Below are positions 19,622-57,727 of a DNA stretch of 64,000 bases, piece after piece. Position 1 is the stretch's first letter. Each line of letters begins with the position of its first letter. The notes beneath the pieces were generated by a model that saw nothing but the letters and a program-made list of their open reading frames with translations, made no database searches and was not told the origin of the DNA. Both the position numbers and the translations under genes were made by a program. The stretch is taken from IMG/VR virus record IMGVR_UViG_3300046808_001241, positions 1-64,000 of that record; one strand, written 5' to 3'.

Positions 19622-19891
19622 ATGAATAAACCGAAGATTAGTTTAGGCGGAAAGAACAACCATGGACGCATGAGTGGCGCACGTTCGAGTCGTGCATCTT
19701 CGACCATTTTCAAAAAATTGCAAAAGTTGGATAGAGAAATTTCTTTTCTTAAAGCTCGTTGTAATTTGTCAAATTATTATATTTTAGGAAAAGCATTTAT
19801 AAAAAAGACAGAAGAAAGAATAGAAAAACTTGACTTGAAGAGAAAACAAGTTAGACTTGAAAGAAAGAAATATAAAAATGAAAACAAATAA
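19622..19891 (+). CDS. basic hypothetical protein
   Basis: packed ORF. Confidence 0.55.
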   Translation: MNKPKISLGGKNNHGRMSGARSSRASSTIFKKLQKLDREISFLKARCNLSNYYILGKAFIKKTEERIEKLDLKRKQVRLERKKYKNENK

Positions 19892-42966: not shown

Positions 42967-43380
42967 GTGAGTGAAAAAACTACATCTGATCTTTTTTTAG
43001 AATATCATCAAAAGATTGAAGAATTTCTTAAAATTGATGAATTGAATCTCAAGGATGCTCAAATGTCTTTGCCTTCTGTAAGACATTATTGGGTTGGTCG
43101 TTTGATGTTCCATAAACAGCAAATAGGTAAGTTTAAAAAAGCTAGAGAAAAGGCCACTAAAGCTCTTAGACAAAAGTTAGAACACGAGTCTCCAGTCGGT
43201 CTTACATCAAAAACAATAACTGAATCGATTACCCAAAATGATATTGTTCTTAAGATTGATGATGAAATTGCAAACCATGAAATTTTAGTAGAGTACCTTA
43301 CAAAAGTAGAAAATAATTTTAGAGATGCTCAGCATGGTTTATCAAACTTGACTAAGATTATAACTTTAGAAACAACATAA
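42967..43380 (+). CDS. uvsY: recombination mediator UvsY
   Basis: 137 aa helical protein directly before uvsW; IDELNL, T4 synteny. Confidence 0.75.
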   Translation: MSEKTTSDLFLEYHQKIEEFLKIDELNLKDAQMSLPSVRHYWVGRLMFHKQQIGKFKKAREKATKALRQKLEHESPVGLTSKTITESITQNDIVLKIDDEIANHEILVEYLTKVENNFRDAQHGLSNLTKIITLETT

Positions 43381-44819
43381 TGGAAGTTTTGTTTGATTTT
43401 GATACAGTTTCCAGAAAGCCAAAAATTATTTCTGAGTTTTTAGATCAAATCCGTGAACATTTTTCCGTAGAAGATAAAGCGCTAGTCTTTATGAGAAAGC
43501 GATATGGACGCAATATGCCGGTTCGCAAATACGCAATCGCTAATAAAGGAAATTTTGATTTGCCGTTTTATCAAGAAATTTGTAAAGAAATAACTGAAAC
43601 ATTTCCCAGTCTTATACTTAAAAAAACAAACAAATTCGATCAGCTTGTACGAGACAAACAAATTGCAAAAGAGTTGGTCAAACTAAAATTAGAACCAAGA
43701 GACTACCAGAAAGAATCTGCAAAACTAGCCTTACAAAAAGGAAACGGAATTATTGTTCTTCCTACATCAGCTGGGAAGACATTTACAATGGCGTTAATAT
43801 CAGCAACGGCTATTAAAGAAAAGAGCTATAATATTTTTATAATTGTTCCAAATATTCAACTTGTTCAGCAAACATATCAAGATTTTTTGGATTACGGAAT
43901 TGATGAGAATTTAGTTTCCAAATGGACGGGGAATAACGAATATAGAGGCACAAAGATTGTCATTTCAAACAGTCAAATACTACTATCTGAAAAACAAGAT
44001 ACGACTGTGCTCAAAGACTTTCAATGTGTAATTGTAGATGAGTGCCATAAAATTGCTACGGCTACTGAGATTACAAAGCTAGTTAAAAAGTTGAACTCTG
44101 ATCATATTTTTGGTTTGACTGGTTCATTGCCTGAAAACAAATTTGATATTTGGTCTTTAAATAGAATTTTTGGTTCTGTAATTTATCATAAAAAATCTAT
44201 AGAATTGAGACAGGATCAATACATATCAAGAGTCAGAGTCGTAGGATTAGAAATTCAATACTCAAACGTACCAAACTTTACGAGACCTTCTATGTCTGAA
44301 CCAACTGCTGGATACGAAGAGGAAACGACTTGGTTACACACTAATAAGTTTAGAAATGAATTAATAGGAAATTTAATCGATAAACTAGACACTAATACAC
44401 TTGTCCTTGTCGATAGAATTGTTCATGGAGAAATTTTGTTAGAGCATTTAAAACAAAAAACGTCAAAACAAATTTACTTTATTCAAGGTTCTGTAGATGT
44501 AGAAGAACGAGAAAAGCTCAGACAGTTAATGGAAGAAACGCATGGAATCGTTTGTGTTGCTATTTCTAAAATTTTTTCTACTGGCATTTCAATAAAAAAC
44601 CTACACAACGTTGTTTTCGCGGCTATCGGAAAAGCGAGGATTAAGATCATTCAATCAATTGGAAGAAGTTTGAGATTGCATCAAACAAAAGAAATAGCAA
44701 CAATCTTTGATGTAGCTGATGTTAATTTAACATACGGTTATAAACATTTTGAAGAAAGAAAACGTTTATATGAATCCGAAAAAATTCCTATCGTATGCAA
44801 ACAGTTTGTTGAAAAGTAA
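43380..44819 (+). CDS. uvsW: SF2 helicase UvsW
   Basis: PRDYQ, PTSAGKT, VDECH, TGS, STGISIK, QSIGR.LR. Confidence 0.92.
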   Translation: MEVLFDFDTVSRKPKIISEFLDQIREHFSVEDKALVFMRKRYGRNMPVRKYAIANKGNFDLPFYQEICKEITETFPSLILKKTNKFDQLVRDKQIAKELVKLKLEPRDYQKESAKLALQKGNGIIVLPTSAGKTFTMALISATAIKEKSYNIFIIVPNIQLVQQTYQDFLDYGIDENLVSKWTGNNEYRGTKIVISNSQILLSEKQDTTVLKDFQCVIVDECHKIATATEITKLVKKLNSDHIFGLTGSLPENKFDIWSLNRIFGSVIYHKKSIELRQDQYISRVRVVGLEIQYSNVPNFTRPSMSEPTAGYEEETTWLHTNKFRNELIGNLIDKLDTNTLVLVDRIVHGEILLEHLKQKTSKQIYFIQGSVDVEEREKLRQLMEETHGIVCVAISKIFSTGISIKNLHNVVFAAIGKARIKIIQSIGRSLRLHQTKEIATIFDVADVNLTYGYKHFEERKRLYESEKIPIVCKQFVEK

Positions 44820-44848
44820 TTTATATAACGTATACTGCAAAAAGTTTT

Positions 44849-45382
44849 ATGAGTCAAGTTCTAAAAAAACCCAAAAAGAAAAAAGTTGAAGCAATTTCAA
44901 CAGCAAAAGAAAATCAACCAAAGCGAGTTAGGAGAACTAAAGAGGAACTCAAGGATGTATATATAGATCCAATTGCAATGGAAGCTTTAATTGAAGAATA
45001 TTACGCTTCGGACATCATCTCAAATCGCTTAGCTGAAATGGTTCAAATGATCGCCGTACGATTGGGGTTAGCTCGTAACTTTTACTCTTACAGCTTCAAG
45101 ACCGAAATGCAGGGAGATGCGATTGTAAAAATGATGACGGCTTTGAGAAGAAAGCGTTTTAAATGTGGATCTGGTTATAATCCCTTTTCCTACTTTACAA
45201 AAGTGGCTTATCACGCTTTTCAAAATTGTATTAAAAAATCCAAAAAAGATTTTGAAACGTTGAAGCGCTATCAGGAGGAAATTTACGAAGATCACGTTTG
45301 TACGGGTCAAATACCTTCACGTAAAAACACACGTTATGGTGGCTCTGATGACTACACACAAAATGGACACTTCGAAGATTAA
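44849..45382 (+). CDS. 55: late-transcription sigma factor gp55
   Basis: NF.SY..K.EM..DA, NPFSYFT...Y.AF...IKK.K; synteny between uvsW and 47. Confidence 0.85.
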   Translation: MSQVLKKPKKKKVEAISTAKENQPKRVRRTKEELKDVYIDPIAMEALIEEYYASDIISNRLAEMVQMIAVRLGLARNFYSYSFKTEMQGDAIVKMMTALRRKRFKCGSGYNPFSYFTKVAYHAFQNCIKKSKKDFETLKRYQEEIYEDHVCTGQIPSRKNTRYGGSDDYTQNGHFED

Positions 45383-46427
45383 TCCAAAAAATAACAAAGT
45401 TCTTTTCTTTTCCGATTTGCATTTGGGAGTTCATCAAAATTCCCAAACTTGGCACAAAATTGCTTTGGATCTAGCCGAGTGGATTAACCAAGTCATGAAA
45501 GACAATAAGTTGAATACTATCTTTTTTGCAGGGGATGTGTTTCATGATCGTCATGAAATTGGAGTAAATACATTACACGTTGCTAAAAAGTTCTTTAATA
45601 TTCTAAAAGATTATAATATTCACATCGTGCCTGGCAACCACGATGCCTTTCTTTCATCGACCGTTGAAATTAATTCTGTAGAAATTCTGGAATCGGAAAA
45701 TATTTGCGTTTATACAAATCCGACTACACTAACGGTTGGAGAAAAATTAGTCACCTTTTGTCCGTGGAAAACTATAGTTAAAGATCTACAAAAAGTAGAC
45801 ATGTTGGTTGGCCATTTTGAAATAGCCAACTTTAAAATGAACGCAACAAAAATTTGCGATCACGGAGACAGTTCTACTGATTTGCTTGAAAAAGCTGAAG
45901 CAGTGGTTACAGGTCATTTTCATTACAGAGAACAAAGAAACTACGATGACAAGTTTGTTTTGTATTTGGGGTCGCCTTATGAAATGGATTTTGGAGATAG
46001 AAACCAACAAAAAGGAGTTTCTATTATTGACTTCGATGACAAGTTTAATGTCGAGTTTATTGAAAACGATTTAACACCAAAACATTTCCGATTAAAAATT
46101 TCTGAGCTAATACAAAAACAATATACAGATCTCCCCAATATTGTTAAAAATAATATTATAAGCGTATATGTTGATACTAAAATTGATACATTGACCTTAG
46201 ATTTATTAAACACCAAACTTACCCAATATAGTCCTCTTCAGTTTAGAACAGAATTTAACGTTTTAGATAGTGCACAAGTGGATACTAAAGATGTTAAAAA
46301 ATTATCAATTGATATAGAAACCGCTTTTCAGGAGTTTGTTGAGCACGTTGAAACTAGAGCTACTAAAAAAGAAGTGCTTGATAAATGCATAGAACTTTAT
46401 AAGTTATGTCAAACTTCCCATGAGTAA
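45363..46427 (+). CDS. 47: recombination endonuclease gp47 (Mre11/SbcD-like)
   Basis: SDLHLG, GDVFH, GNHD, GHFE, GHFH. Confidence 0.92.
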   Translation: MDTSKINPKNNKVLFFSDLHLGVHQNSQTWHKIALDLAEWINQVMKDNKLNTIFFAGDVFHDRHEIGVNTLHVAKKFFNILKDYNIHIVPGNHDAFLSSTVEINSVEILESENICVYTNPTTLTVGEKLVTFCPWKTIVKDLQKVDMLVGHFEIANFKMNATKICDHGDSSTDLLEKAEAVVTGHFHYREQRNYDDKFVLYLGSPYEMDFGDRNQQKGVSIIDFDDKFNVEFIENDLTPKHFRLKISELIQKQYTDLPNIVKNNIISVYVDTKIDTLTLDLLNTKLTQYSPLQFRTEFNVLDSAQVDTKDVKKLSIDIETAFQEFVEHVETRATKKEVLDKCIELYKLCQTSHE

Positions 46428-47271
46428 AAAAGAAAAAATAGGTGTTGGAATTATTACTTGTAATAGATTAAACTATCTAAAAGGATTAGTTGATACGCTA
46501 GTTTCTTGCGAGAATTTTATTGATTGTTTAGTTGTCGTAAATGATGGAACGGATCAGCCAGACTGGAAGTTACCTTATGGTGAGTGGGTCAATAACGAGC
46601 AAAACTTAGGTGTAGCTAAATCAAAAAATAAAGCTCTAAAGCATTTACTTGACGCTCAGTGCGATTTTTTCTTTTTAATTGAGGATGACATGCTCATTAA
46701 AGATCCAACCGTATTTGAGCAATATATTAATGCATTTAAGGTAAGTGGAATTCAGCATTTTAATTACGGACCTGGATCGCCTTTTAATCGCAAGCAAGCT
46801 ATAGTTAATTATGATTTGCACAACAGACATCTTCTTGACGAAAAGTCAGAGCCAAATCCTAAACTTATTGTTGATTATAAAATATGTAAGATCGCTCTAT
46901 ATGAGCATACGGTTGCAATGTTTTCGTTTTTCACTAGAGAGTTGTTAGAAAAAGGACTGGGCTTCATGCCAGAAGAATATGACAGGTGTTGGGAGCATGT
47001 AGATAGCACTTACCAAATCATCAAAGCTGGCTATCATCCGCCATTTTGGTGGTTTGCAGATATTGCAAACAGTCACGAACTTGTTGCGGAAGCTCCAGGA
47101 GCAATTGAGAATTCTTCGATTGCTAAAAACAAGGATGAATGGATGCAGCGTGTAATGGAAGGAAGGGAAATTTATAAACGTAAGCACGGACACTATCCAA
47201 ATCAACCGCCTCAACACACCAAAGAGGAGGTCATTGAAATTTTAAAACAAATTAAAACAAATGGTAAATGA
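46420..47271 (+). CDS. GT-A (family 2-like) glycosyltransferase
   Basis: IITCNR, VVNDG, N.GVAKSKN, IEDD, WEH. Confidence 0.85.
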   Translation: MSKKEKIGVGIITCNRLNYLKGLVDTLVSCENFIDCLVVVNDGTDQPDWKLPYGEWVNNEQNLGVAKSKNKALKHLLDAQCDFFFLIEDDMLIKDPTVFEQYINAFKVSGIQHFNYGPGSPFNRKQAIVNYDLHNRHLLDEKSEPNPKLIVDYKICKIALYEHTVAMFSFFTRELLEKGLGFMPEEYDRCWEHVDSTYQIIKAGYHPPFWWFADIANSHELVAEAPGAIENSSIAKNKDEWMQRVMEGREIYKRKHGHYPNQPPQHTKEEVIEILKQIKTNGK

Positions 47272-48040
47272 AATTATAACTTTTGGACAAGGATATAAAC
47301 TAAGTCCTGGAATTAAAGTGTTTGTGCAAAGCGCTAAAAAAATTTGCAATAACGTGACTATTATTTGTTCTGGGCTGTCAAAAGATCTGACTGATTATCT
47401 CGAAAATAATAAAGTCAATTTAATTGATGCTAAAGAATTAGCTTTAAAGCACAATGTACAAACCAACATTTCGCCTTATACATTAAAAGTAATTTATTTT
47501 TATTTATATGTTAAAAATTACTCTTCCGCTTCCAATGTATATCTTTGTGATTTTACTGACATATATTTTCAAAAAAGTCCTTTTGATTTAATACAAAATA
47601 TAAGACCTTATGTCACTAGTGAGAATCACTTTATTTGCAATTGCGAAACTAATACAACATGGATAAAACTTTGTTATAACAATGACATTTATAACTTGCT
47701 TAAAAAATATCAAATTATAAACGGAGGCAGTATACTAGGAAACAGAGAAACTGTAGTAAATCTTCTTAAGGAAATGTGTGCTGATATGACTCAAATAATT
47801 TCAAGAATTGGAAATTATCAAAACATTGATCAAGCGTCTTTAAATAAAACCATTTATTTTGATCAGCATCGTTACAATGTGTTAAACGATTTTGAAATTA
47901 TAAATATGGCTCATTTTGGAAACGCCAAGGTGGATTTGAATAAAGAATTTATTACAATTAATGGCAATGTTCCGCATATCATTCATCAATATGACGTCAT
48001 TAAAACATTAGAAAATAATCTGTATGTCAATCATCAATAA
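47261..48040 (+). CDS. GT-A-like glycosyltransferase
   Basis: CDFTDIYFQKSPF, INGGSILG, DQASLN, HQYD. Confidence 0.75.
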   Translation: MVNEIITFGQGYKLSPGIKVFVQSAKKICNNVTIICSGLSKDLTDYLENNKVNLIDAKELALKHNVQTNISPYTLKVIYFYLYVKNYSSASNVYLCDFTDIYFQKSPFDLIQNIRPYVTSENHFICNCETNTTWIKLCYNNDIYNLLKKYQIINGGSILGNRETVVNLLKEMCADMTQIISRIGNYQNIDQASLNKTIYFDQHRYNVLNDFEIINMAHFGNAKVDLNKEFITINGNVPHIIHQYDVIKTLENNLYVNHQ

Positions 48041-48770
48041 TAAATTCGACGTCATTATACTTTCTTTAGCTTTAGATGATGAAAGTTTTAATACCACTAA
48101 AACATGCATAGAATCTTACATTGTCACTGCTAATGAACTGATTAATAAAATTTTTGTAGTAGAAACAAATATCGAGTTTAATCGAGATTATAAACAACCA
48201 AAAGTAGAAATCATAAAGCCCGGCAAACGATTTAACTATAACGAATTTTATAATATTGCTTTGAGTAAATGTGAAGCAGAATTTGTTATAGGACCGAACA
48301 ATGATCTTGTAATTCAACCAAATTGCATTCAAACATTGCTGAGAGAATTTCAAGCAAACAGCTGTATAAGTTCGATATCGCCAATCGATAGAGAATGGCA
48401 CAGACATACAAAGATGTATTTGCCGTTAGACAACAAACTCTATCATGGTTATGAAGTGTCGTTACATATGTTTGGATGCATTTTTGCATGCCGGCGTTCT
48501 GTTTTTAGTGAAATAGGCTTCTTAGATGAAAAGTTTTATTTCTTTTATCAAGACAATGATTATGCGATGTCTTTAGAAAGATGTGGTATTTTGCACGGAG
48601 CTCATACGGGAGCGTTAGTTAAACACCAATCTGGAAATTCTAATAAAAATGCAGAAGATAGACTCAAATATACTCCTAAAAATATGAACGAGCAGGGAGA
48701 TCTTTTAGCAAGTAAATGGTCATCAGAACCTTTTGTATCAGGAGGTTTTAAAAAATTTAAAGATTATTAA
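48024..48770 (+). CDS. GT-A (family 2-like) glycosyltransferase
   Basis: FNYNEFYN, NNDL, IGFLDE.F.F.YQDNDY. Confidence 0.85.
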   Translation: MSIINNKFDVIILSLALDDESFNTTKTCIESYIVTANELINKIFVVETNIEFNRDYKQPKVEIIKPGKRFNYNEFYNIALSKCEAEFVIGPNNDLVIQPNCIQTLLREFQANSCISSISPIDREWHRHTKMYLPLDNKLYHGYEVSLHMFGCIFACRRSVFSEIGFLDEKFYFFYQDNDYAMSLERCGILHGAHTGALVKHQSGNSNKNAEDRLKYTPKNMNEQGDLLASKWSSEPFVSGGFKKFKDY

Positions 48771-49711
48771 TGAAAAACGTAGCATTCCACTCGAATCAAC
48801 TAGGTATACGAGGAACAGAGGTTGCTTTGTATGATTACGCTTTGTATAATGAAATAATTTTGGGAAACAAATCTTTTATTTTATCAGACAAACATAAAGA
48901 TTTACAAGCACTTAAAAAGTTTCAAGACAAGTTTAGTGTGTTCTTATACGATTCATTTGAAGACACTTTTAAATTTACTAAAGACAGAGATATAACACAT
49001 GTTTACTTTATTAAAGGCGGGGACAATGACCGTAAAGTAATCCCCAACACTAAAAATGCTATCCACGCAGTCTTTCAAGAAAAGGACTTACATGGAGATT
49101 CATACGCATACGTTTCTAAGTGGCTTGCTGAAAAGATGGACTCTCCAGAGAAGTATGTTCCGCACATCGTCACATTACCTCCTCCACTCAAAAATTATAG
49201 AAATAAGCTCGGCTTAACAGACGAACAACTTATTATAGGCCGATATGGAGGCTTAAATGAATTTGATCTGCCATTTGCTAAACAAGCCGTAATAAATGCT
49301 GCTAAAAGCCGACCTGATATCGTATTTTTATTCATGAATACAGCTGCGTTTTGCAATCAAGCAAACATTATTTTTATTGAAGGCACGTGCAATTTGCAAA
49401 ATAAATCGGATTATATTAATACTTGCGATTACATGCTTCACGCAAGACATAGAGGAGAAAGTTTTGGACTAGCTATATCCGAATTTTTGTTTCACGACAA
49501 ACCGGTTATAAGTTGGAAAAATGGTTTAGATAGAAATCATATAGAAATATTGGGAGACAAAGGTATTTGGTACGATAGTGAATATCAGCTAAATAATTTG
49601 CTTTTAAATTTAAACAAAAACGACAAACCTCGAGGTTATTACAAATCTATCGTAGATCAATTTTGTCCGGAAGTTGTAATGAAGAGATTTGATCAAGTCT
49701 TTCTTCGATGA
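48770..49711 (+). CDS. GT-B (family 4-like) glycosyltransferase
   Basis: RGTEVALYDYA, GESFGLAISE. Confidence 0.85.
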   Translation: MKNVAFHSNQLGIRGTEVALYDYALYNEIILGNKSFILSDKHKDLQALKKFQDKFSVFLYDSFEDTFKFTKDRDITHVYFIKGGDNDRKVIPNTKNAIHAVFQEKDLHGDSYAYVSKWLAEKMDSPEKYVPHIVTLPPPLKNYRNKLGLTDEQLIIGRYGGLNEFDLPFAKQAVINAAKSRPDIVFLFMNTAAFCNQANIIFIEGTCNLQNKSDYINTCDYMLHARHRGESFGLAISEFLFHDKPVISWKNGLDRNHIEILGDKGIWYDSEYQLNNLLLNLNKNDKPRGYYKSIVDQFCPEVVMKRFDQVFLR

Positions 49712-50622
49712 AAACCATATCAATTATTGCTCCATATCGAAAGGGAGACGTATGGTCCGTTCCTTTAAGTTATTACTATGAGTTTAAACGTTTGGGGTAC
49801 AATGTTAAAATTTTTAATAACTTAAACGAGGACCAGCCTGGCATTACGCAAATGGATCCAAGAGCTTGGAACGAAGAAGGGCTACAACAATTATTAAAGG
49901 AAGCAAACGATGGAATTTTTGTACCAAATTTAATATTTCATTTTGATTTTGGCTTATATAAATCTCCTTTCCTTAACAAAAAACATTTTCCAAAAGCTTT
50001 GTGGATTTATGAATCTGGGGACGATCCGCAATGTTTTTCGTATAACTTTGAAAAAGTAAAATCGGGCAATTTTGATTTAATTATGTCTCCTGACATTAGA
50101 GCAGTAAATGAGTACAACAAGAGAGGGTTTAAAGCCGTATGGTCTCCGCACTTTGCTGACCCGCTTTTTTTAGGAGAAGAAATCGAACCAGCATATGACG
50201 CGATTACATCTAGACATTTTAGCGAACCTTTTTTTAAAGAATTAAAAGGCAGATTAGGGGAACGTTTTTTTGCCAGAGATCAATTTATAAACGAAAAAGA
50301 CCATTTACAGTTTTTAAAACAAGGCAAGATTATTGTACAGAACAGCAAGTACAAAGAAATAACCAGGAGAATATTTGAGGGTATGCTAGCCAACAGGCTC
50401 GTAATAACCGATCGTCCGGATCCAGCCACAAAAATCGATCTTATTTTTAAAGAAAATGTTGATATAGTTTATTTTGATAATATTGACGATTGTGTAAAAA
50501 AAATTAAATATTTTTCCTCAAATCAAAAAGAACTGGAGCGGATATCTAAAACTGGATACAACAAAGTTCTTAAAAACCACACTATACAAAAAAGAATCCA
50601 ACACTTAATAAAAATATTATGA
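49708..50622 (+). CDS. GT-B glycosyltransferase (CgeB/YkvP-like)
   Basis: GDDPQ, RRIFEGM, I.K.GY.KVL.NHT. Confidence 0.75.
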   Translation: MKTISIIAPYRKGDVWSVPLSYYYEFKRLGYNVKIFNNLNEDQPGITQMDPRAWNEEGLQQLLKEANDGIFVPNLIFHFDFGLYKSPFLNKKHFPKALWIYESGDDPQCFSYNFEKVKSGNFDLIMSPDIRAVNEYNKRGFKAVWSPHFADPLFLGEEIEPAYDAITSRHFSEPFFKELKGRLGERFFARDQFINEKDHLQFLKQGKIIVQNSKYKEITRRIFEGMLANRLVITDRPDPATKIDLIFKENVDIVYFDNIDDCVKKIKYFSSNQKELERISKTGYNKVLKNHTIQKRIQHLIKIL

Positions 50623-51470
50623 AAATTTTATATCTAACCAAGGGAGATCACGTAGACTACCAAAACGATTGCTTGTTAATTGGTTTAAAAGAGCTGTTTG
50701 GTACGAGCGTTGTAGACTTTAACAAACAAGAACATAACTACACAACATATAGTGAACAAAGTGCTAGAAAATTATATGGAAAAGGAATGTCTGTTACGAA
50801 AGTTTTGCCAGATTTAGAAGTAGATAGAACTGACATTACAAGCAAGATTAAAAATCGTTATTTTGATTATATTGTTTACGGCTCAATATGGCGTTGCAAC
50901 GACTATCTTGATAAGATCTTACAATATTATCCTAAAAATCAAGTAATAGCTGTAGACGGAGAAGACGAAACAAATATACACAAGTGTTTCGATCTCGGAA
51001 TCTTGTACTTTAAAAGAGAATTACGTTTGAAGCACGAACGTCTGTTTCCTATTTCTTTTGCTATGCCTACAAACAAAGGGGTCTTTAATAAAGATAAAAT
51101 TAAACAGTTTTCGTTTATTACTCCCTTGAATAGACAAACATACATTTACGATAACGAACAAGATTATTATAAAGATTATCAAGAAGCAATGTTTGGTATT
51201 ACGCTTAAAAAAGCAGGATGGGATTGCATGAGACACTATGAGATTTTATCGAATGGTTGTATTCCGTTTTTTATAGACGTAGAAAAATGTCCGGAACTTA
51301 CAATGACTCACTTTCCTAAAACCTTATGCAAAGAAGTAAATCAAAACTTCAAAAGCTTGACGGCAGACCAAATTTATGATAAGTTTATTAATCAGTTTGA
51401 GGAACACTTTAAACAAAACAACACTACTAAGGCTCTAGCAAATTATTTTATTAACTCGATTAAATTATGA
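50619..51470 (+). CDS. glycosyltransferase-like protein
   Basis: GWDCMRHYEIL..GCIP. Confidence 0.7.
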   Translation: MKILYLTKGDHVDYQNDCLLIGLKELFGTSVVDFNKQEHNYTTYSEQSARKLYGKGMSVTKVLPDLEVDRTDITSKIKNRYFDYIVYGSIWRCNDYLDKILQYYPKNQVIAVDGEDETNIHKCFDLGILYFKRELRLKHERLFPISFAMPTNKGVFNKDKIKQFSFITPLNRQTYIYDNEQDYYKDYQEAMFGITLKKAGWDCMRHYEILSNGCIPFFIDVEKCPELTMTHFPKTLCKEVNQNFKSLTADQIYDKFINQFEEHFKQNNTTKALANYFINSIKL

Positions 51471-52042
51471 AAAGATTCGATATTATTAACCATTTAATTA
51501 AAAAATACAATTACAAAACATATCTTGAAATCGGAACTCAATTTGGAGATTGTTTTAGCAACATTGATATCGAACGCAAAGTTTGCGTAGACCCAGAAAA
51601 GAGATATGACGAACTTACTCATGAAATGACATCAGACGAATTCTTTAATCAAAATTCAGAGACGTTCGACATTGTTTTTGTTGATGGCTTGCATTTAGAA
51701 GAGCAATCCACTAAGGACATTCATAATTCATTAAAATGTTTAAACGACGGAGGAGCAATAGTAATTCACGATTGTTTGCCCCATTGCGAAGAATTTATTA
51801 AAGTATGCTGGAATGGTACGGTTTTCCGTTCAATTATCGATCTTCGTTATAATAATCCTGAGCTAAGTTTACATGTAGTTGATACAGATTGTGGATGCGG
51901 AGTTATAACTAAACAACCTCCTCTTCAAGCAGTGTACAATAAAGTACCCATCGATTTAGCAAAAACGTATTACTATTACGACACGAATAAACAAGAATTA
52001 ATGAACGTAATTTCTATCGATCAGTTCGTTTCCATGCATTGA
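51467..52042 (+). CDS. class I SAM-dependent methyltransferase
   Basis: YLEIG, VDP, FDIVFVDGLH, GGAIVIHD. Confidence 0.85.
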   Translation: MKRFDIINHLIKKYNYKTYLEIGTQFGDCFSNIDIERKVCVDPEKRYDELTHEMTSDEFFNQNSETFDIVFVDGLHLEEQSTKDIHNSLKCLNDGGAIVIHDCLPHCEEFIKVCWNGTVFRSIIDLRYNNPELSLHVVDTDCGCGVITKQPPLQAVYNKVPIDLAKTYYYYDTNKQELMNVISIDQFVSMH

Positions 52043-52081
52043 AGGTTGAAAAACTTTTCTAATGGCTTATACTTGCTTTAG

Positions 52082-53878
52082 ATGCGGTTTATAACATTTA
52101 AAACTCTTGAAGGGAAAAATTTTCTTTCCTTTGGAGATTCCACAGTACAGATAGAGTTAAGGCCTGGTGTTAATGCAATAATTGGCACAAACTATGACAA
52201 AGAAGACTCGAAAAACGGAGCAGGCAAATCAAGCGTAACTGAACTATTATACTATTCCTTGTATGGAACTACTCTTCGAGAAATTTCAAAGGATCATATA
52301 CAAAACAGTCTGACCAAAAAACGATGCGAGGTGTCTCTAGAGTTTGAAATTACTTCAAACAATACGGTTGATGTATATAAAATTATCAGAAAATTAAACC
52401 CAACTAAATGCACTTTAATTAAAAACGGACAAGATGTAACGAGATCTACGTTAGCTAAAACCAATGCTTTGATTCAAGAGCTGATTCACACACCAGCTAC
52501 TGTATTTCAAAATTCTGTAATAATGTCAGCAAACAACGCTTTACCATTCATGGCGTTACCAAAGACAGATAAAAGAAAGTTTATTGAGAGCGTTTTAGGT
52601 TTAGAAGTTTTTACACAAATGGTGTTAAAAGCTAGAGATGATTACAGTATTGCTAAAAAGGACTATGAAGTTGCGTATACTAAATTTGAGCAAATACAAA
52701 ACGAACTTAGCTTTAATCAAACACAATTTGATAACTACGAAAATTTAAAAATTGAAAGATTGAATAAGCTTAACGAAAAGAAAAAAACACTAACGTCGGA
52801 TATACAAAGCATCGAAACAAAAATCGTTAAGTCCAAAACGCTAACAAACGAAAAGGACAAAACTCAGCTAGAACATACCGAACAACAACTACAAAGTTTT
52901 ACCGACAAAAAAAGCAAACTACAAACAAAAATTAACACGATTCAAGCTGAGATTAATTCTGTCAATAAACAAATTAAGCAATTACAGACAAACAAAGATA
53001 ACTGTCCGACATGTTCTAGAGAATACTCCGAGGAGCATGTAGGTCATGTTTCTGAATTAATTGCAAAACACCAAGCGGATATTAAAAAATTTTTAGAAGC
53101 AGAGAATAAAATTAAAAATTCTGTACAAGATATAGATAAAGAGATCATTAGTCTTCAAGCTGTTAAAAAGATTTGCACGGAAAATATAGCAAATATAAAT
53201 CAAATTATTAACGATAATAAAACATACGAGCTTAGCATTAAACACTTGAAGTCAAATCTAAAAGATGTTGAAGAAGAAATAGAAGTTGTACATAAAGAAC
53301 AAAATAACGATCTCAAAGGAAAAATACTAACCCTTAAAACATCTGCAGAACACCTGCAACAAAAAGTAGACAAGTTGAATAACGAATTAAACGTGTTAGA
53401 AACGGTTAAATTTGTTATTTCCGAAGAAGGAATTAAATCTTTTATTGTCAAGAAAGTTCTTAAAGTTCTTAACTCAAGACTAGCATTTTATTTGAAAAAA
53501 CTTGAAGCAAATTGTTTGTGCAGATTCAACGAATTTTTTGATGAGGAAATAATTGACGAAAATACTAATCAAAAATCATACTTTAATTTTTCTGGAGGAG
53601 AACGTAAACGTATTGACTTGGCTTGTTTATTTGCGTTTGCTGATATTCGTAGATTACAAGGAGATGTTAATTTTAGTACAGTTTTTTATGACGAACTTCT
53701 TGATTCCTCGCTTGATGATAAAGGAGTGATGCTTACTCTTAGATTACTCAGAGAGCGCTTTAATGAAAATAATGAGACCTGTTATATTATTACACACAGA
53801 GGACCAGAAGTGCTGTGTAAAGCAGAGCATGTAATTCATGTCGTTAAACGCAACGGCGTTTCTACGATTCAATCATAG
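52082..53878 (+). CDS. 46: recombination ATPase gp46 (Rad50/SbcC-like)
   Basis: KNFLSFG, NGAGKS, CPTC hook, FSGGE, DELLD, ITH. Confidence 0.95.
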   Translation: MRFITFKTLEGKNFLSFGDSTVQIELRPGVNAIIGTNYDKEDSKNGAGKSSVTELLYYSLYGTTLREISKDHIQNSLTKKRCEVSLEFEITSNNTVDVYKIIRKLNPTKCTLIKNGQDVTRSTLAKTNALIQELIHTPATVFQNSVIMSANNALPFMALPKTDKRKFIESVLGLEVFTQMVLKARDDYSIAKKDYEVAYTKFEQIQNELSFNQTQFDNYENLKIERLNKLNEKKKTLTSDIQSIETKIVKSKTLTNEKDKTQLEHTEQQLQSFTDKKSKLQTKINTIQAEINSVNKQIKQLQTNKDNCPTCSREYSEEHVGHVSELIAKHQADIKKFLEAENKIKNSVQDIDKEIISLQAVKKICTENIANINQIINDNKTYELSIKHLKSNLKDVEEEIEVVHKEQNNDLKGKILTLKTSAEHLQQKVDKLNNELNVLETVKFVISEEGIKSFIVKKVLKVLNSRLAFYLKKLEANCLCRFNEFFDEEIIDENTNQKSYFNFSGGERKRIDLACLFAFADIRRLQGDVNFSTVFYDELLDSSLDDKGVMLTLRLLRERFNENNETCYIITHRGPEVLCKAEHVIHVVKRNGVSTIQS

Positions 53879-53913
53879 ACAAATATCAATCTATCCTTTA
53901 AATAAACTTTTAT

Positions 53914-55140
53914 ATGACTGTTACTCCTGTACAAATAGGGCTTCAAACACTGCCAGGTGCTCCTTTAGGAATTCCTTTTGGAGCTCCAATGCAAACATAC
54001 TTACATAAGTCAGAGACAGTAAGCTTGCCTCCTCCAGAGGTTCCAGGTTCTGGACTAAAAAGGGCAATAAATTATTTAGCTGATTATGGAGGTTGTGGTT
54101 ATTATCGTTGCATGGCTCCTAATCTTTTGCTAAATCTTTATCAAAAATCTGTTGTAATTGAATCGACTGCAATGATCTTAGACCCTAAGTTTTATCAAAC
54201 AGTTGAGGCAGTTAAGTTGCAAAGACAAGCAACTCCTCAGCAATTGCAATTCGTGAAAGTTCTTAAACAAATTTCACAACAAAAGCCTCTCAAACTAATT
54301 TATGAAGTAGACGACGTGGTTTTTGCTGAAGACATTCCGTTGTACAACCGAAACAGAGATGCATTCACAGCTCCTGAGATTCAAAATTCCATTAAAGAAA
54401 TTTTATCAATGATGGATGAAATTACAGTTACATGCGATTACTTTAAGGATTACATTATAGAAAAAAGTGGTAATAAAAAAGTCTCTGTAATTCCAAACTA
54501 CTTGATGAAGTGGTGGTTTGATAGGTATTATAATCTAGCAGATTTAGTTAAAAAATACGATAAGAACAAAAAGAAGCCAGTGGTAGCTATCTTTGCATCA
54601 GGAACTCACGTTGATGTAGCAAATAGGGTAAATCAGCAAGATGACTTTGCAACCGTGGTGCAGCACATAATTAAAACGCGCACCGAATTTCAGTGGCACT
54701 TTTACGGCTCATATCCGTTAGGATTAAAACCGTTTATAGACAAAGGAGAAATTAAGTTTTTTCCGTGGGTGCAACTTCCGGATTTTCCTCAAGCCATGGC
54801 CAACTCCGGAGCACAAGTAACTTTTGCTGCTCTTCAAGACAATAACTTCAACCGTTGCAAGTCAAACATTAAGCTTATTGAAGCAGGAGCTTTAGGCATT
54901 CCCTGCGTATGTCCTGATATGGTGACATACAAGGACGCGTTTCTAAAATATAAAACCGGAAATGAATTTATTGATTGTTTAAAGAGCACTCTAAAAAACC
55001 AATCAACATATGTAGAGCAATGCAAAAAAGCTAGAGCTCATGCCGAAAAATTTTGGCTGGACGATGAGAAAAACCTCATGAAACATCATGAAGCTTATTT
55101 CACTCCGTTCGGCTCAAAAGATAGAAAATTTTTAGTTTGA
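53914..55140 (+). CDS. GT-B glycosyltransferase
   Basis: YEVDD, N.FNRCKSNIKLIEAGALGIP; TAAATA at 53899. Confidence 0.85.
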   Translation: MTVTPVQIGLQTLPGAPLGIPFGAPMQTYLHKSETVSLPPPEVPGSGLKRAINYLADYGGCGYYRCMAPNLLLNLYQKSVVIESTAMILDPKFYQTVEAVKLQRQATPQQLQFVKVLKQISQQKPLKLIYEVDDVVFAEDIPLYNRNRDAFTAPEIQNSIKEILSMMDEITVTCDYFKDYIIEKSGNKKVSVIPNYLMKWWFDRYYNLADLVKKYDKNKKKPVVAIFASGTHVDVANRVNQQDDFATVVQHIIKTRTEFQWHFYGSYPLGLKPFIDKGEIKFFPWVQLPDFPQAMANSGAQVTFAALQDNNFNRCKSNIKLIEAGALGIPCVCPDMVTYKDAFLKYKTGNEFIDCLKSTLKNQSTYVEQCKKARAHAEKFWLDDEKNLMKHHEAYFTPFGSKDRKFLV

Positions 55141-55171: not shown

Positions 55172-57727
55172 ATGTACCGTTCTGCTAGCTATAATCCGTT
55201 CAACGAATCTGTTTTTCTTCGCACATGGTCCGAAGAAGGAGTTCGTATAGAAACCGAAATTCCGTTTCGTCCTTATTTGTTCTTAGAAAAGGAAGGAGCT
55301 GATGATGCCACTTCTATCTTTAAAACGTCCTTGGTTAAAAAGCAGTTTAAAAACTCAATGGAGAGAAAGAGGTTTGTAGACTCAACTGCAAACAAACGAA
55401 TTTTTCATAATTTAGCTCCAGAGCAGCAATTTTTGATCGAAATGTATAAAGATCAAAACAGCAAGCCAGAGTTTTCTGCACATCCCTTGAAAGTATTTTT
55501 GCTCGACATCGAAGTCGATACTACAGTAGATTCAGCTTTTCCGACTCCAGAAAAGGCAGCCGTTCCAATTAATCTAATTACCGTTTATGATACTTTAACT
55601 AAATCGACTCACACATGGGGGTTGAAACAGAGATATACTCCAACTTTACCTGATTGTATATATCATTATTGCAAAGATGAAGAAGAGTTAATTTTACAAT
55701 TTGTAGAATTTTGGAAAGCTGATTATCCAGATATTGCTAGTGGCTGGAATTCTAGTGGATTTGACTTTCCTTACATTATTAATCGTTTTATGAGAATTTT
55801 TGGAGACGATTTTGTTCGTCGGCTTTCTCCAACTGGAAACGTTAGAGGCCGAAAAGTTTTCACCGACATGGGAAAAGAGGTTACTATATGGTCGATTCAA
55901 GGCGTATCTTTGTTAGATTACATGGACTTATATAAAACATTTTCTCCAGGAGAAAAAGAATCCTTTAGCTTGAATTATATTGCTGAGCTGGAACTCGGTG
56001 AAGGAAAAATCGCATATAATGCTGTTAGTCTCGGAGAGCTTGCTGCAAGTGACTGGAAAACATTTGTTGACTATAACATTCAAGACGTTCATTTGCTTGT
56101 TAGGCTAGAAGAGAAGTTAAAATTTTTGGAAATTGCGCGAATGCTTGCATACAAAGGGTGTACCAATTTTGAAGCTGCTCTTGGAAAGGTAGCCATTGTA
56201 ACTGGAGCAGTAGCTATCCAAGCCTCTAAGCAGGGATATGTAATCCCAACTTTTCCAAATAACATGGAGAGAGAGTCATATGAGGGTGGCTTTGTCAGAG
56301 ACCCAGAAAAAGGCATACAAAAAGCAGTAGTTAGCTTCGACGTAAATTCGCTGTATCCTAATACAATTATTACTTTAAACATTTCCCCAGAAACTAAAAT
56401 TGGAAAAGTAATATCAGGTGATTATGAGAATTTCACAGGAGAGATGTCAATCCGTTTGATTAACGGAAAAACGCATAGGTTGACTGCTGATAAATTTAAA
56501 ATGTTTTTGGCCAAAGAACAGATTTCTTTATCAAAAGCAGGAGTTTTATATTCTCAAAAAACCAAAGGAGTGATTCCAAACTTGATTGATGAAATTTACA
56601 GCGATCGTGTCAAAACCAAGCAAGAGCTGACAAAGCTTAAAAAATCTAAAAGCAAAGACGATAGAGCGCACCAATTAAAAATTACGTATTGTGATACTCT
56701 TCAATATACATTAAAGATTTTATTGAACTCAATATACGGCACTTTTGCGAACAAACACTCATCATTGATGGATATTGATCATGCAACATCAATTACTGTT
56801 ACTGGTCAAAACGTTTCGAAAGCTGGAGGTCACATTATTGATAATTTTGTTAAAGTAAAATATGGTGTTGAACATTCGATAACCAAATACGGCGACACGG
56901 ATTCTTTGTATGTTTCCATCCAGCCAATACTAGATAAATTACAAATTCCTTTGTTAGTAGAAGGTGAAATAAATCCAAAAGTTCATGAAATTGTAGACAA
57001 ACTAGATAAGCACGTAAATACTGAAATCTTGGAGTGGGCAAGAAAAGAGCTATTTTCCATAGATCCAAGATACGTCTTTAAAAGAGAAGTTATTGCAGAC
57101 GTAGGAATCTTTCTTCAAAAGAAAAGATACATCTTGCATGTTCTTGATGAAGAAGGCGTTGCTGTAGATAAATTTAAATATACTGGCATTGAACTAGCAC
57201 GTTCGACGACTCCAAAAAAGGTCAAAAAGTTTATTGAGGATATTATTAAAACAGCCTTGCTAACACAAAATTTTAAACAAACCAACGATGTCTATAGAGT
57301 GAGTTATGCTTCTTTTCAAAAGTTAGATCCAAACGATATTGCAGCCAGAACTTCAATCAACAATCTCGAGAAATATTCTGAAGGATCCTCGTTATATAAA
57401 TTTCAAAACAAAACTCCGTCTCATGTTAAAGGAGCAATTGCCTATAACATTTTGATTAAAGAGCTTAAAATAGACGACAAATATGAATCCATACAAGCAG
57501 GTCAGAAAGTCAAAAAACTGTACTGTGCAAAAAATAAATACGGACTGGACGCGATAACTTATGTTTCAACTCTTCCAGAAGAGTTTGCGATTAGGATTGA
57601 CTGGGATAAAATGTTTTCTAAGCTAGTAACGCAACCAACTGAAAGACTATACAATGCGATCGGTTGGGTTTTGCCGGAAATTGGAAAAGAAGTTCAAACA
57701 GATCTTTTTGAAATGTTTGCAAGTTAG
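55172..57727 (+). CDS. 43: family B DNA polymerase gp43
   Basis: DIE, SFDVNSLYP, KILLNSIYG, YGDTDS, KKRY. Confidence 0.97.
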   Translation: MYRSASYNPFNESVFLRTWSEEGVRIETEIPFRPYLFLEKEGADDATSIFKTSLVKKQFKNSMERKRFVDSTANKRIFHNLAPEQQFLIEMYKDQNSKPEFSAHPLKVFLLDIEVDTTVDSAFPTPEKAAVPINLITVYDTLTKSTHTWGLKQRYTPTLPDCIYHYCKDEEELILQFVEFWKADYPDIASGWNSSGFDFPYIINRFMRIFGDDFVRRLSPTGNVRGRKVFTDMGKEVTIWSIQGVSLLDYMDLYKTFSPGEKESFSLNYIAELELGEGKIAYNAVSLGELAASDWKTFVDYNIQDVHLLVRLEEKLKFLEIARMLAYKGCTNFEAALGKVAIVTGAVAIQASKQGYVIPTFPNNMERESYEGGFVRDPEKGIQKAVVSFDVNSLYPNTIITLNISPETKIGKVISGDYENFTGEMSIRLINGKTHRLTADKFKMFLAKEQISLSKAGVLYSQKTKGVIPNLIDEIYSDRVKTKQELTKLKKSKSKDDRAHQLKITYCDTLQYTLKILLNSIYGTFANKHSSLMDIDHATSITVTGQNVSKAGGHIIDNFVKVKYGVEHSITKYGDTDSLYVSIQPILDKLQIPLLVEGEINPKVHEIVDKLDKHVNTEILEWARKELFSIDPRYVFKREVIADVGIFLQKKRYILHVLDEEGVAVDKFKYTGIELARSTTPKKVKKFIEDIIKTALLTQNFKQTNDVYRVSYASFQKLDPNDIAARTSINNLEKYSEGSSLYKFQNKTPSHVKGAIAYNILIKELKIDDKYESIQAGQKVKKLYCAKNKYGLDAITYVSTLPEEFAIRIDWDKMFSKLVTQPTERLYNAIGWVLPEIGKEVQTDLFEMFAS

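What the first reader, a model, noticed from the sequence alone, without database searches (positions are those of the whole stretch)
46420..55140. Six glycosyltransferase-like genes and a methyltransferase split gp47 from gp46; another glycosyltransferase precedes gp43
Seen: a 5.6-kb block of overlapping genes (three GT-A, two GT-B, one GT-like, one SAM methyltransferase) lies between gp47 and gp46, and a further GT-B with its own late promoter follows gp46. Established: gp46 and gp47 are near neighbours in T4, and T4 glucosylates hmC DNA with only two enzymes. Inference: this many transferases plus a methyltransferase suggest assembly of a defined, methylated oligosaccharide on DNA bases, on virion proteins, or on the host surface receptor.
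Basis: partly seen in the sequence, partly recalled or inferred. Interest (0 to 1): 0.65.

Follow-up and report, generated by a model that had tools for sequence, protein, structure and literature searches.

The report
Swappable sugar-building gene cassette in phage
An uncultured freshwater T4-like phage carries seven soluble sugar-transferase and methyltransferase genes in a slot between two DNA-repair genes; related phages fill that slot with other sugar genes, so the phages probably build different sugar coats, most likely on their own particles and probably not on their DNA.

Summary
Window 46420-52042 contains seven abutting or overlapping + strand genes between gp47 (SbcD) and gp46 (SbcC). 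They are three GT-A enzymes (A, B, C), three GT-B-type enzymes (D, E, F) and a small O-methyltransferase-like enzyme (G). An eighth gene, the GT-B enzyme H (53914-55140), lies between gp46 and gp43 behind a late-promoter-like motif.

Three results are new. First, in 64 related IMG/VR loci the gp47|gp46 slot is hypervariable: 0 to more than 10 kb and 122 protein families, nearly all for glycan synthesis. Second, H is a core gene and the best conserved protein of the region. Third, the complete 217-kb genome has no thymidylate-synthase homologue, ThyX, TET/JBP or C5-methyltransferase, so every known route to glycosylated DNA lacks its precursor step. The genome does encode a dTDP-glucose 4,6-dehydratase, which lies inside the island in some relatives. 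No island protein in any relative is a polytopic membrane protein.

Best reading: a cytoplasmic, exchangeable glycan-assembly cassette that builds a methylated oligosaccharide, probably containing 6-deoxyhexose. The acceptor is most likely a virion protein; the main rival is host envelope glycan. Sugar-transferase islands are already described in pelagimyophages and cyanomyophages, so this is a new variant of a known, functionally untested kind.

The parts
44809..44836 (+). sigma-70-like promoter candidate (TTGAAA-N16-TATACT) in front of gp55; it probably drives gp55, gp47 and A-G
   Evidence: There are two exact copies in the window, both intergenic; the other copy lies in front of gp46. Sigma-70-like hits as a whole are not enriched over shuffles, so this is only a lead.
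44849..45382 (+). gp55-like late sigma factor (context)
   Evidence: phmmer with T4 gp55 gives E 4e-5. The order UvsY-UvsW-gp55-gp47-gp46 is the same as in cyanomyovirus ACG-2014f.
45336..46427 (+). gp47 / SbcD-Mre11-like nuclease; conserved left flank of the island
   Evidence: phrog_100 1.5e-61 and Metallophos. T4 gp47 matches at 1.5e-20.
46420..47271 (+). A: GT-A (GT2-like) glycosyltransferase; the commonest island family and usually the first gene after gp47
   Evidence: phrog_2456 5.5e-25. Invariant E88-D89-D90 DXD motif in 17 homologues. Profile hits GT2 structures 5tze (3e-4) and 5hea. The family has 27 members in 22 loci.
47261..48040 (+). B: GT-A fold transferase resembling retaining GT6/GT8 enzymes
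   Evidence: AlphaFold model with pLDDT 90. Foldseek matches alpha-1,3-GalT, LARGE1 and LgtC at E 2e-8, TM 0.55-0.63. D97 and D100 are invariant. phrog_1579 3.6e-8.
48024..48770 (+). C: GT2-family (GT-A) glycosyltransferase
   Evidence: PF00535 at 27.5 bits, above the 23.3-bit cut-off. phrog_22332 2.9e-8.
48770..49711 (+). D: GT-B, GT4-like glycosyltransferase
   Evidence: EX7E motif GESFGLAISE, invariant in 8 homologues. Weak PF00534 hit. Profile hits the GT4 enzyme HepE 4xso (0.0085) and chlorovirus B736L (0.087).
49708..50622 (+). E: GT-B C-terminal-domain family (Glyco_trans_1_2); the least conserved and sometimes absent member of this cassette
   Evidence: PF13524 7e-20. Absent in L012, L013 and L018; only 49-53% identical in near relatives.
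50619..51470 (+). F: GT-B-like protein with no sequence family; its relatives are overwhelmingly viral
   Evidence: The Atlas model has pTM 0.93. Its structure neighbour carries PF13524, with TM 0.80. The nearest clusters are 90-98% viral.
51467..52042 (+). G: small class-I SAM methyltransferase, O-methyltransferase-like
   Evidence: PF13578 at 38 bits, above the 26.3-bit cut-off. The profile hits cation-dependent O-methyltransferases (3ntv 1e-5, 6g7d 7e-3, caffeoyl-CoA OMTs). It gave no hit to a DNA methyltransferase family apart from a loosely named PHROG.
52046..52073 (+). second copy of the TTGAAA-N16-TATACT promoter-like site, in the 39-nt gap before gp46
52082..53878 (+). gp46 / SbcC-Rad50-like ATPase; conserved right flank of the island
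   Evidence: phrog_77 3.4e-97, SMC_N and the Rad50 zinc hook.
53898..53905 (+). late-promoter-like motif TTAAATAA, 16 nt before the start codon of H
   Evidence: [A/T]TAAATAA lies at -12 to -25 of 33 genes, mostly in the structural region. ATAAATAA is 16-fold enriched upstream of ORFs. TTTAAATAA or a close variant is conserved in several near relatives.
53914..55140 (+). H: core GT-B glycosyltransferase, present in every relative whose locus reaches past gp46 and the best conserved protein of the region
   Evidence: 58-85% identity in all such loci, against 40-48% for gp46 and 54-60% for gp43 in the distant clades. 121 invariant columns, including E323 in KLIEAGALGIP. Foldseek matches GT4 enzymes at E 7e-10. 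phrog_7162 2.6e-25.
55172..57727 (+). gp43 DNA polymerase (context)
   Evidence: tblastn to T4-like polymerases, about 32% identity. T4 gp43 matches at 1.5e-64.

Best explanation
Genes A-G are one allele of a hypervariable, exchangeable glycan-synthesis cassette. It sits in the small plastic slot between gp47 and gp46 in a clade of uncultured freshwater T4-like phages. All the enzymes are soluble, so they should act in the cytoplasm of the infected cell.

Proposed mechanism (inferred):
- The phage dTDP-glucose 4,6-dehydratase, at genome 202547-203599, diverts host dTDP-glucose towards a 6-deoxyhexose.
- The conserved enzymes place the first sugars on an acceptor shared across the clade. These enzymes are the core GT-B enzyme H and the nearly ubiquitous GT-A enzyme A.
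- The variable transferases B-F extend the chain.
- G O-methylates a sugar.

The most likely acceptor is one or more virion proteins. That would give each phage lineage its own 'glycotype', as in mycobacteriophages and chloroviruses.

Shown: the folds and motifs, the variability of the slot, the conservation of H, the lack of membrane steps and the lack of DNA-precursor enzymes. Inferred: the order of action, the donor sugars and the acceptor.

Confidence by level: about 0.85 that this is a functional, exchangeable glycan-assembly cassette; about 0.4 that the acceptor is virion protein. The figure given below is for the whole statement.
For: 1. Seven GT folds and one O-methyltransferase-like enzyme, with conserved catalytic motifs.
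2. The slot ranges from 0 to more than 10 kb in 45 relatives and holds 122 families. These are dominated by methyltransferases (including FkbM and TylF types), GT2/11/25/31/32/47, epimerases/dehydratases, RmlD and nucleotidyltransferases.
3. Equally close relatives carry either the same cassette (L004, L010) or a wholly different one (L006, L026).
4. H is present in every locus that reaches past gp46. It is more conserved than gp46, gp47 or gp43 and is preceded by the phage's late-type motif.
5. RmlB scores 411 bits against a 365-bit cut-off in this genome. Its homologues lie inside the island in 14 relatives.
6. A-H have no hydrophobic transmembrane-like segment. None of 415 island proteins is polytopic.
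7. The families of B and F are mostly viral, which argues against recent capture from host O-antigen loci.
8. 35 of the 39 listed differences inside A-F in a ~94% identical lake relative fall on third codon positions (my count), which indicates purifying selection.
9. Short contigs 100% identical to B, C, D and G occur in a freshwater metatranscriptome library.
10. The genome has no TS homologue, ThyX, TET/JBP or C5-methyltransferase. T4 gp42, a-gt and b-gt find nothing at E<=10. 11 relatives also have no TS homologue.
Against: - No acceptor was identified, and there are no glycoproteomic data.
- A-G have no late promoter. They appear co-transcribed with gp55 and gp47, in a replication/recombination module rather than among structural genes.
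- Peripheral soluble GTs could still act on host undecaprenyl-linked intermediates using host flippases.
- Authors of the closest described systems favoured host O-chain modification (PMC7029224; PMC12801897).
- The H model is only moderately confident (pLDDT 66).
- The RNA-library contigs may be carried-over DNA.
Confidence: 0.4

Rival explanations
1. The cassette remodels a host envelope glycan (LPS O-chain, capsule or S-layer glycan) during infection. The phage transferases would act as peripheral enzymes on host lipid-linked intermediates and use the host's own flippase and ligase. The result would block superinfection or alter recognition of the infected cell.
For: This is the interpretation published for GT-rich islands of pelagimyophages (PMC7029224) and for the 'cell wall synthesis/modification' genes of cyanomyophages (PMC12801897). 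The families found in relatives' islands (GT25, GT11, Caps_synth, RmlD, nucleotidyltransferases) are typical of LPS and capsule loci. Hypervariability would follow host strain diversity. Expression with early or middle genes would suit host takeover.
Against: No island in 45 relatives encodes an initiating phosphoglycosyltransferase, flippase, polymerase, ligase or any polytopic membrane protein. The families of B and F are overwhelmingly viral rather than host-like. A core, extremely conserved GT (H) with a late-type motif fits a conserved phage acceptor better than a variable host glycan. The idea has not been tested experimentally in any of the cited systems.
Confidence: 0.3
2. The transferases hypermodify phage DNA with an oligosaccharide, as in T4, RB69 and the TET-dependent metavirome pathways, to evade restriction.
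For: The genes sit in the replication/recombination module, as T4 a-gt lies next to gene 47 and b-gt next to gene 42. DNA GTs of both GT-A and GT-B fold exist, and some build multi-sugar chains (bioRxiv 10.1101/2023.12.21.572611; PMC13326640).
Against: Known pathways need a TS-family enzyme (for hmC, hmU or 5hoC) or a C5-methyltransferase plus TET/JBP. The complete, DTR-bounded genome has none of these, nor ThyX. 11 relatives, including a second complete genome, have no TS homologue. T4 gp42, a-gt and b-gt find nothing. H matches GT4 enzymes first; a cyanophage protein annotated 'DNA alpha-GT' ranks only 36th. G resembles O-methyltransferases, not DNA methyltransferases.
Confidence: 0.07
3. 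The enzymes glycosylate something else in the cytoplasm, such as a host protein or a small molecule or signal. Alternatively they only redirect nucleotide-sugar pools, or the cassette is a selfish, exchangeable moron with no role in the virion.
For: All the enzymes are soluble. GT-B enzymes nearest to H (BshA, MshA) act on small molecules. The slot lies between recombination nuclease genes and also holds small ORFs of unknown role in T4 and cyanophages.
Against: Six or seven consecutive transferases plus a sugar-type methyltransferase and a deoxysugar enzyme point to an oligosaccharide product. There are no PADLOC hits. Purifying selection and a clade-wide core GT argue against neutral cargo.
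Confidence: 0.15

Closest known systems
Hypervariable glycosyltransferase-rich islands of aquatic T4-like myophages: the pelagimyophage 'host recognition cluster' (PMC7029224) and the cyanomyovirus LPS/'cell wall synthesis and modification' genes of P-SSM2, S-SCSM1 and S-SCSM2R (PMC12801897)
   Same: Large aquatic T4-like genomes with clusters of up to 13 GTs, sugar epimerases/dehydratases and deoxysugar enzymes. Gene content is non-syntenic between conserved modules. Function has not been tested.
   Different: Here the island sits in the replication/recombination module, exactly between gp47 and gp46, and not between VrlC and gp14 among tail-fibre genes. It is partnered by a clade-wide core GT-B enzyme (H). 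The lineage is far from both groups: the DNA polymerase is about 32% identical.
Mycobacteriophage virion glycosylation (Freeman et al. 2023, as summarised in PMC12619734)
   Same: Phage-encoded soluble GTs. Glycans are attached in the cytoplasm to capsid and tail-tube subunits and act as a surface shield.
   Different: Those phages carry few GTs, have Gram-positive-type hosts, and their acceptors have been shown by experiment. Here there are eight GTs, a methyltransferase and RmlB. No acceptor is known and there is no sequence relationship.
Chlorovirus PBCV-1 capsid glycosylation machinery: A064R with two GT domains and a methyltransferase domain, plus virus-encoded nucleotide-sugar 4,6-dehydratases
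   Same: Virus-encoded, cytoplasmic, ER-independent assembly of a methylated glycan containing 6-deoxyhexose on the major capsid protein. The gene inventory is the same: GT-A, GT-B, a methyltransferase and a 4,6-dehydratase. The profile of D weakly hits chlorovirus GT B736L (E 0.087).
   Different: It is a eukaryotic giant virus. The genes are dispersed and are not in a swappable cassette. Homology is at best remote.
T4 a-/b-glucosyltransferases, RB69/DLP3 arabinosyl-5hoC and TET-dependent DNA glycan pathways
   Same: Phage GTs lie next to replication genes, and in some cases sugars are added one after another.
   Different: All of these depend on a TS homologue or on a methyltransferase plus TET, which are absent here. 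There is no similarity to a-gt or b-gt.
Bacterial O-antigen/capsule loci and phage Gtr serotype-conversion modules
   Same: Cassette-like allelic diversity between conserved flanking genes, and the same enzyme families.
   Different: There is no initiating transferase, flippase, polymerase or membrane Gtr protein in any allele.

Membership tests
GT-A fold nucleotide-sugar glycosyltransferases (proteins A, B, C) | Single Rossmann-like GT-A fold with a DXD-type metal/nucleotide-binding motif | tested here: met
   A has an invariant EDD motif, and its profile hits GT2 structures. B has a pLDDT-90 model that matches GT6/GT8 structures at E 2e-8, with D97 and D100 invariant. C matches PF00535 above its cut-off; its DXD motif was not examined.
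GT-B fold glycosyltransferases (D, E, F, H) | Two Rossmann-like domains, with the C-terminal domain binding the nucleotide (the EX7E or related Glu) | tested here: met
   D has an invariant EX7E motif. E matches PF13524 at 7e-20. F's Atlas model has TM 0.80 to a PF13524 cluster. H matches GT4 structures in Foldseek at E 7e-10 and has invariant E323, but the model's pLDDT is only 66. F's catalytic residues were not examined.
Class I SAM-dependent O-methyltransferase (G) | Rossmann methyltransferase domain above the family threshold, with nearest relatives that methylate hydroxyl groups | tested here: met
   PF13578 at 38.2 bits against a 26.3-bit cut-off. The profile hits cation-dependent O-methyltransferases. 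The substrate cannot be tested here.
T4-type DNA glucosylation | A phage dCMP hydroxymethylase (TS family) to supply hmC | tested here: not met
   PF00303 finds nothing in the complete genome. T4 gp42 finds nothing at E<=10. None in 11 relatives.
T4-type DNA glucosylation | A transferase homologous to a-gt or b-gt | tested here: not met
   phmmer of T4 a-gt and b-gt against all six-frame ORFs found no hit at E<=10.
Post-replicative DNA glycan pathways (C5-methyltransferase + 5mYOX/TET + GT) | A C5-cytosine methyltransferase and a TET/JBP dioxygenase in the genome | tested here: not met
   PF00145 and PF12851 both have no match.
Wzx/Wzy- or ABC-dependent O-antigen/capsule gene cluster | An initiating phosphoglycosyltransferase, flippase or transporter, and polymerase or ligase (polytopic membrane proteins) | tested here: not met
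   A hydropathy scan found no transmembrane-like segment in A-H. Only 14 of 415 island proteins have 1-2 marginal hydrophobic segments, and none is polytopic. This is a crude scan, not a dedicated predictor.
dTDP-6-deoxyhexose supply (Rml pathway) | RmlA, RmlB, RmlC and RmlD | tested here: inconclusive
   Only RmlB is present, with TIGR01181 at 411 bits against a 365-bit cut-off. There is no RmlA, RmlC or RmlD. The remaining steps would have to come from the host or from unrecognised enzymes.
Hypervariable GT island of aquatic T4-like phages (pelagimyophage HRC type) | Non-syntenic, GT-rich content between conserved flanks across related genomes | tested here: met
Hypervariable GT island of aquatic T4-like phages (pelagimyophage HRC type) | Location between VrlC and gp14, together with tail-fibre genes | tested here: not met
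   The island lies between gp47 and gp46 in the replication module. No fibre-like genes were seen in it.
Virion protein glycosylation systems (mycobacteriophage or chlorovirus type) | Glycans covalently attached to capsid or tail proteins | not testable with these tools
   This needs virions and mass spectrometry.

The most novel reading that the evidence does not exclude
A whole clade of freshwater T4-like phages has an O-antigen-like 'serotype locus' of its own. In this reading, gp47 and gp46 (Mre11/Rad50-type recombination genes) flank a hot spot where glycan cassettes are swapped. A universally conserved priming GT-B enzyme (H) then lets each lineage coat its virion with a different methylated deoxyhexose oligosaccharide, giving a phage glycocalyx under diversifying selection.
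Probability: 0.3. Interest if true: 0.8.

Novelty: new variant of a known kind. Interest (0 to 1): 0.5.

Why it matters
Glycosyltransferase islands are common in large aquatic phages, yet none has an experimentally known target. This clade offers a clean case to test:
- a fixed insertion slot with many alleles;
- one allele-free lineage (L058, L059);
- a core transferase;
- no machinery for DNA-base precursors;
- no membrane steps.

If the target is the virion, phage particles in lakes would carry lineage-specific glycans. That would affect adsorption, particle stability and loss to grazers or to sticking on particles, and it would affect how viral 'species' are defined. If the target is the host envelope, the locus would be a portable superinfection-exclusion module. 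In either case the cassette is a source of compact soluble GTs and sugar O-methyltransferases.

Tried and rejected
- Megablast of the island against 50,697 phage records found no match.
- Profiles of H against PDB sequences found nothing meaningful. E and F show no pairwise similarity.
- T4 gp42, a-gt and b-gt against the genome found nothing.
- PADLOC models against A-H found nothing.
- Canonical TATAAATA is not enriched in the window (6 found, 5.4 expected), so I derived the phage's own upstream motif instead.
- Sigma-70-like sites are not enriched (62 found, 61.6 expected).
- Host assignment: the ClpB/C-like protein points to Verrucomicrobiota (56-63% identity). However, the phage tmRNA matched those MAGs only over 32 nt. 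A late protein next to RmlB is about 50% identical to hypothetical proteins of Synechococcus phages. The host therefore remains only a lead.
- 'Moraphages' (PMC12619734) were considered as the lineage and rejected, because they fall outside the T4 group.
- A search for S/T-rich acceptor tails gave candidates, for example window 36588-37952 on the - strand, but no test was possible.
- The structure-atlas library was not available. The Freeman 2023 paper is not held.
- No complex prediction was run, because I make no binding claim.
- The costly large protein searches were not used.

Full report
**What is there**

The window is the first 64 kb of a complete 217,182-bp IMG/VR virus record with direct terminal repeats. 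The region is a T4-type replication/recombination module on the + strand. It reads:
- UvsY-like (42967-43380);
- UvsW-type helicase (43380-44819);
- gp55-like late sigma factor (44849-45382);
- gp47 (45336-46427);
- seven genes A-G (46420-52042);
- gp46 (52082-53878);
- H (53914-55140);
- gp43 (55172-57727);
- then UvsX and gp41.

The order UvsY-UvsW-gp55-gp47-gp46 is that of cyanomyoviruses. In those phages one 97-aa ORF separates gp47 from gp46. In T4 two small ORFs, 46.1 and 46.2, do so. The phage itself is remote from cultured T4-likes: its polymerase is about 32% identical to theirs. Metagenome runs that hold the sequence are from freshwater and lakes.

**Checking the observation**

The seven genes abut or overlap by 1-17 nt and span 5,623 bp.

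- A is a GT-A enzyme. It matches phrog_2456 at 5.5e-25. An EDD (DXD) motif is invariant in 17 homologues, and the profile hits GT2 structures.
- B gave a confident model (pLDDT 90). Its best structural matches are retaining GT-A enzymes of families GT6 and GT8.
- C passes the Pfam GT2 threshold.
- D carries an invariant GT4-type EX7E motif.
- E matches Glyco_trans_1_2 at 7e-20.
- F has no sequence family, but its Atlas model superposes on a Glyco_trans_1_2 cluster with TM 0.80.
- G passes Methyltransf_24, and its profile finds cation-dependent O-methyltransferases in the PDB.
- H has a GT-B fold. Foldseek matches the GT4 enzymes BshA, MshA, PglA and WaaG at E 7e-10, although the model is only moderately confident (pLDDT 66).

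The 'late promoter' needs a qualification. Canonical TATAAATA is not enriched in the window. The phage's own upstream motif is [A/T]TAAATAA, found at -12 to -25 of 33 genes, mostly in the structural region. H has TTAAATAA at -16, and this is conserved in several near relatives. A-G have no such motif. They probably share a transcript with gp55 and gp47, starting from a TTGAAA-N16-TATACT site. A second exact copy of that site precedes gp46.

**Evidence from relatives**

A scan of IMG/VR with gp46 returned 64 related loci. Mapping the window's proteins onto them gave two results.

First, H is present in every locus that reaches past gp46, at 58-85% identity. In the distant clades, where gp46 is about 46% and gp43 about 59% identical, H is still 66-69% identical. 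H has 121 invariant columns in 15 diverse sequences. It is therefore a core gene under very strong constraint.

Second, the gp47|gp46 interval is hypervariable:
- It is empty in L058 and L059, where the gap is 14 nt.
- It is 3.5 kb in L049 and L050.
- It is 5-9 kb in many loci, and more than 10 kb where gp47 lies beyond the fetched flank.

The 415 island proteins fall into 122 families, 53 of them seen in a single locus. Relatives at the same distance carry either the window's cassette (L004, L010) or an entirely different one (L006, L026). Within the window's cassette type, single genes come and go: E is missing in L012, L013 and L018, and L003 has extra genes.

A Pfam tally of one representative per family shows that almost everything recognisable belongs to glycan synthesis. 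It found:
- many methyltransferases, including the FkbM and TylF types;
- GT2, GT11, GT25, GT31, GT32 and GT47;
- Caps_synth;
- epimerases/dehydratases, RmlD and GDP-mannose dehydratase;
- nucleotidyltransferases;
- HAD phosphatases.

Family A is the most frequent family and is usually the first gene after gp47.

**Evidence from the rest of the genome**

The only other sugar gene is a dTDP-glucose 4,6-dehydratase at genome 202547-203599 (TIGR01181, 411 bits against a 365-bit cut-off). Its homologues lie inside the island in 14 relatives, which ties it functionally to the cassette. RmlA, RmlC and RmlD are absent. There are no further GT-B genes of the Glyco_trans_1_2 family.

The genome has no thymidylate-synthase-family gene, no ThyX, no TET/JBP and no C5-cytosine methyltransferase. 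T4 gp42, a-gt and b-gt find nothing, even at E<=10. Eleven relatives, including a second complete 218-kb genome, also lack a TS homologue.

The literature read here says that known glycosylated bases start from one of three precursors. These are hmC or hmU, 5hoC made by a TS homologue (PMC13326640), and 5hmC made by a C5-methyltransferase plus a TET-type dioxygenase (bioRxiv 10.1101/2023.12.21.572611). The DNA option therefore lacks its first step.

**Where the enzymes work**

None of A-H has a hydrophobic stretch that could span a membrane. None of the 415 island proteins is polytopic. The islands therefore never supply an initiating lipid-carrier transferase, a flippase, a polymerase or a ligase. 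The families of B and F are overwhelmingly viral in the ESM Atlas.

A lake relative about 94% identical carries the same cassette in one contig. Of the 39 best-supported differences inside A-F, 35 lie on third codon positions (my count from table 3), so the genes are under purifying selection. A freshwater metatranscriptome library holds short contigs 100% identical to parts of B, C, D and G. This hints at expression, although carried-over DNA cannot be excluded.

**Interpretation**

The data support a cytoplasmic, exchangeable assembly line for a methylated oligosaccharide that probably contains a 6-deoxyhexose. A conserved enzyme (H, and perhaps A) acts on an acceptor common to the clade, and variable enzymes define the rest.

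I favour virion proteins as the acceptor (about 0.4) for five reasons:
- the core transferase carries the late-type motif;
- all steps are soluble;
- no DNA precursor exists;
- the families are virus-specific;
- precedents exist in mycobacteriophages and, from my own knowledge, in chloroviruses, which have the same inventory of enzymes.

The main rival (about 0.3) is remodelling of a host envelope glycan using the host's export machinery. This is what the authors of the closest described systems proposed, without tests. DNA hypermodification is unlikely (about 0.07). Other cytoplasmic acceptors, or neutral cargo, take the remainder.

**Novelty**

GT-rich hypervariable islands are already described in pelagimyophages, in a 'host recognition cluster' between VrlC and gp14. 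Cyanomyophages carry up to 13 GTs. So the kind is known.

What differs here:
- the lineage;
- the fixed slot between the two recombination-nuclease genes;
- the partnership with a clade-wide core GT-B enzyme;
- the clean exclusion, in a complete genome, of the DNA route and of phage-encoded membrane steps.

I rate it a new variant of a known kind, with moderate interest (0.5).

**Limits**

- The hydropathy scan is crude.
- The H model is of moderate quality.
- The host is only a lead. The ClpB/C-like gene is nearest to Verrucomicrobiota, and this was not confirmed by the tmRNA.
- No acceptor, donor sugar or expression timing has been shown.
- No alternative genetic code was used.

Noticed in passing
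window 24603-25036 (+), with tRNAs at 3774-27047: The phage carries a full-length tmRNA (Rfam RF00023, 125.7 bits against a gathering score of 47) inside an array of 13 tRNA genes. ARAGORN's tag peptide is unusually long and ends in ...ELAA.
   Followed up: partly
window 19632-19706 (+): ARAGORN calls a tRNA of undetermined identity with a four-base anticodon (gacg). It could be a frameshift-suppressor-like or otherwise odd tRNA, or an artefact.
   Followed up: no
genome 195658-198147 (-), = L068:5659-8148: An 829-aa ClpB/ClpC-type double-AAA chaperone (Clp_N, AAA_2, ClpB_D2-small), unusual for a T4-like phage. Its nearest bacterial homologues are Verrucomicrobiota/Opitutaceae MAGs at 56-63% identity, which is a possible clue to the host.
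   Followed up: partly
genome 202547-203599 (+), = L068:12548-13600: A dTDP-glucose 4,6-dehydratase (RmlB) lies about 150 kb from the island in this genome, but inside the gp47|gp46 island in 14 relatives. The true start is probably about 20 codons downstream of the longest ORF, which overlaps the divergent neighbour.
   Followed up: yes
genome 201726-202553 (-) and 207588-208418 (-): Two paralogous 275-aa proteins (phrog_17104, unknown function) have late-type motifs and S/T-rich stretches, and one is divergent from RmlB. They are about 50% identical to hypothetical proteins of Synechococcus siphoviruses, podoviruses and myoviruses.
   Followed up: partly
window 36588-37952 (-): A 454-aa ORF lies on the opposite strand inside the early region, with GATAAATAA at -12 and the most S/T-rich 30-residue stretch in the genome (57% S+T). 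It has no PHROG match. It is a possible late structural or glycan-acceptor protein.
   Followed up: partly
window 46420-48040: A matches positions 19-249 of the 482-position profile phrog_1579, and B matches positions 306-430. The two adjacent genes therefore look like the two halves of a protein that is a single two-domain transferase in other phages.
   Followed up: no
window 53914-55140 (protein H): Cysteines C61, C331, C333 and C370 are invariant and C66 is nearly invariant, in the motifs YGGCxxYRC and PCVCPD. They suggest a metal site or disulfides that are not typical of GT4 enzymes.
   Followed up: no
L023-L055, about 20-45 nt upstream of the H homologue: In the distant clade the gp46-H spacer has a conserved TTTAC-N-TAT(T/A)TATTA element instead of TTTAAATAA. 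TATTTATT is the reverse complement of the late-type motif.
   Followed up: no
genome upstream of 113138 (+) and of 178501 (-): Two genes 65 kb apart share an almost identical 45-nt upstream sequence that ends in GAATAAATAACATC. This is probably a duplicated promoter or 5' region of structural genes.
   Followed up: no
L070 (Escherichia phage PaulScherrer, MZ501100.1 47580-50756): The nearest cultured-phage relatives of H, at about 28% identity, are paired 'disaccharide synthase' genes in a four-gene GT cluster next to the primase/helicase and DNA polymerase of Justusliebigvirus/Phapecoctavirus phages. The role of that cluster also seems to be unstudied.
   Followed up: partly
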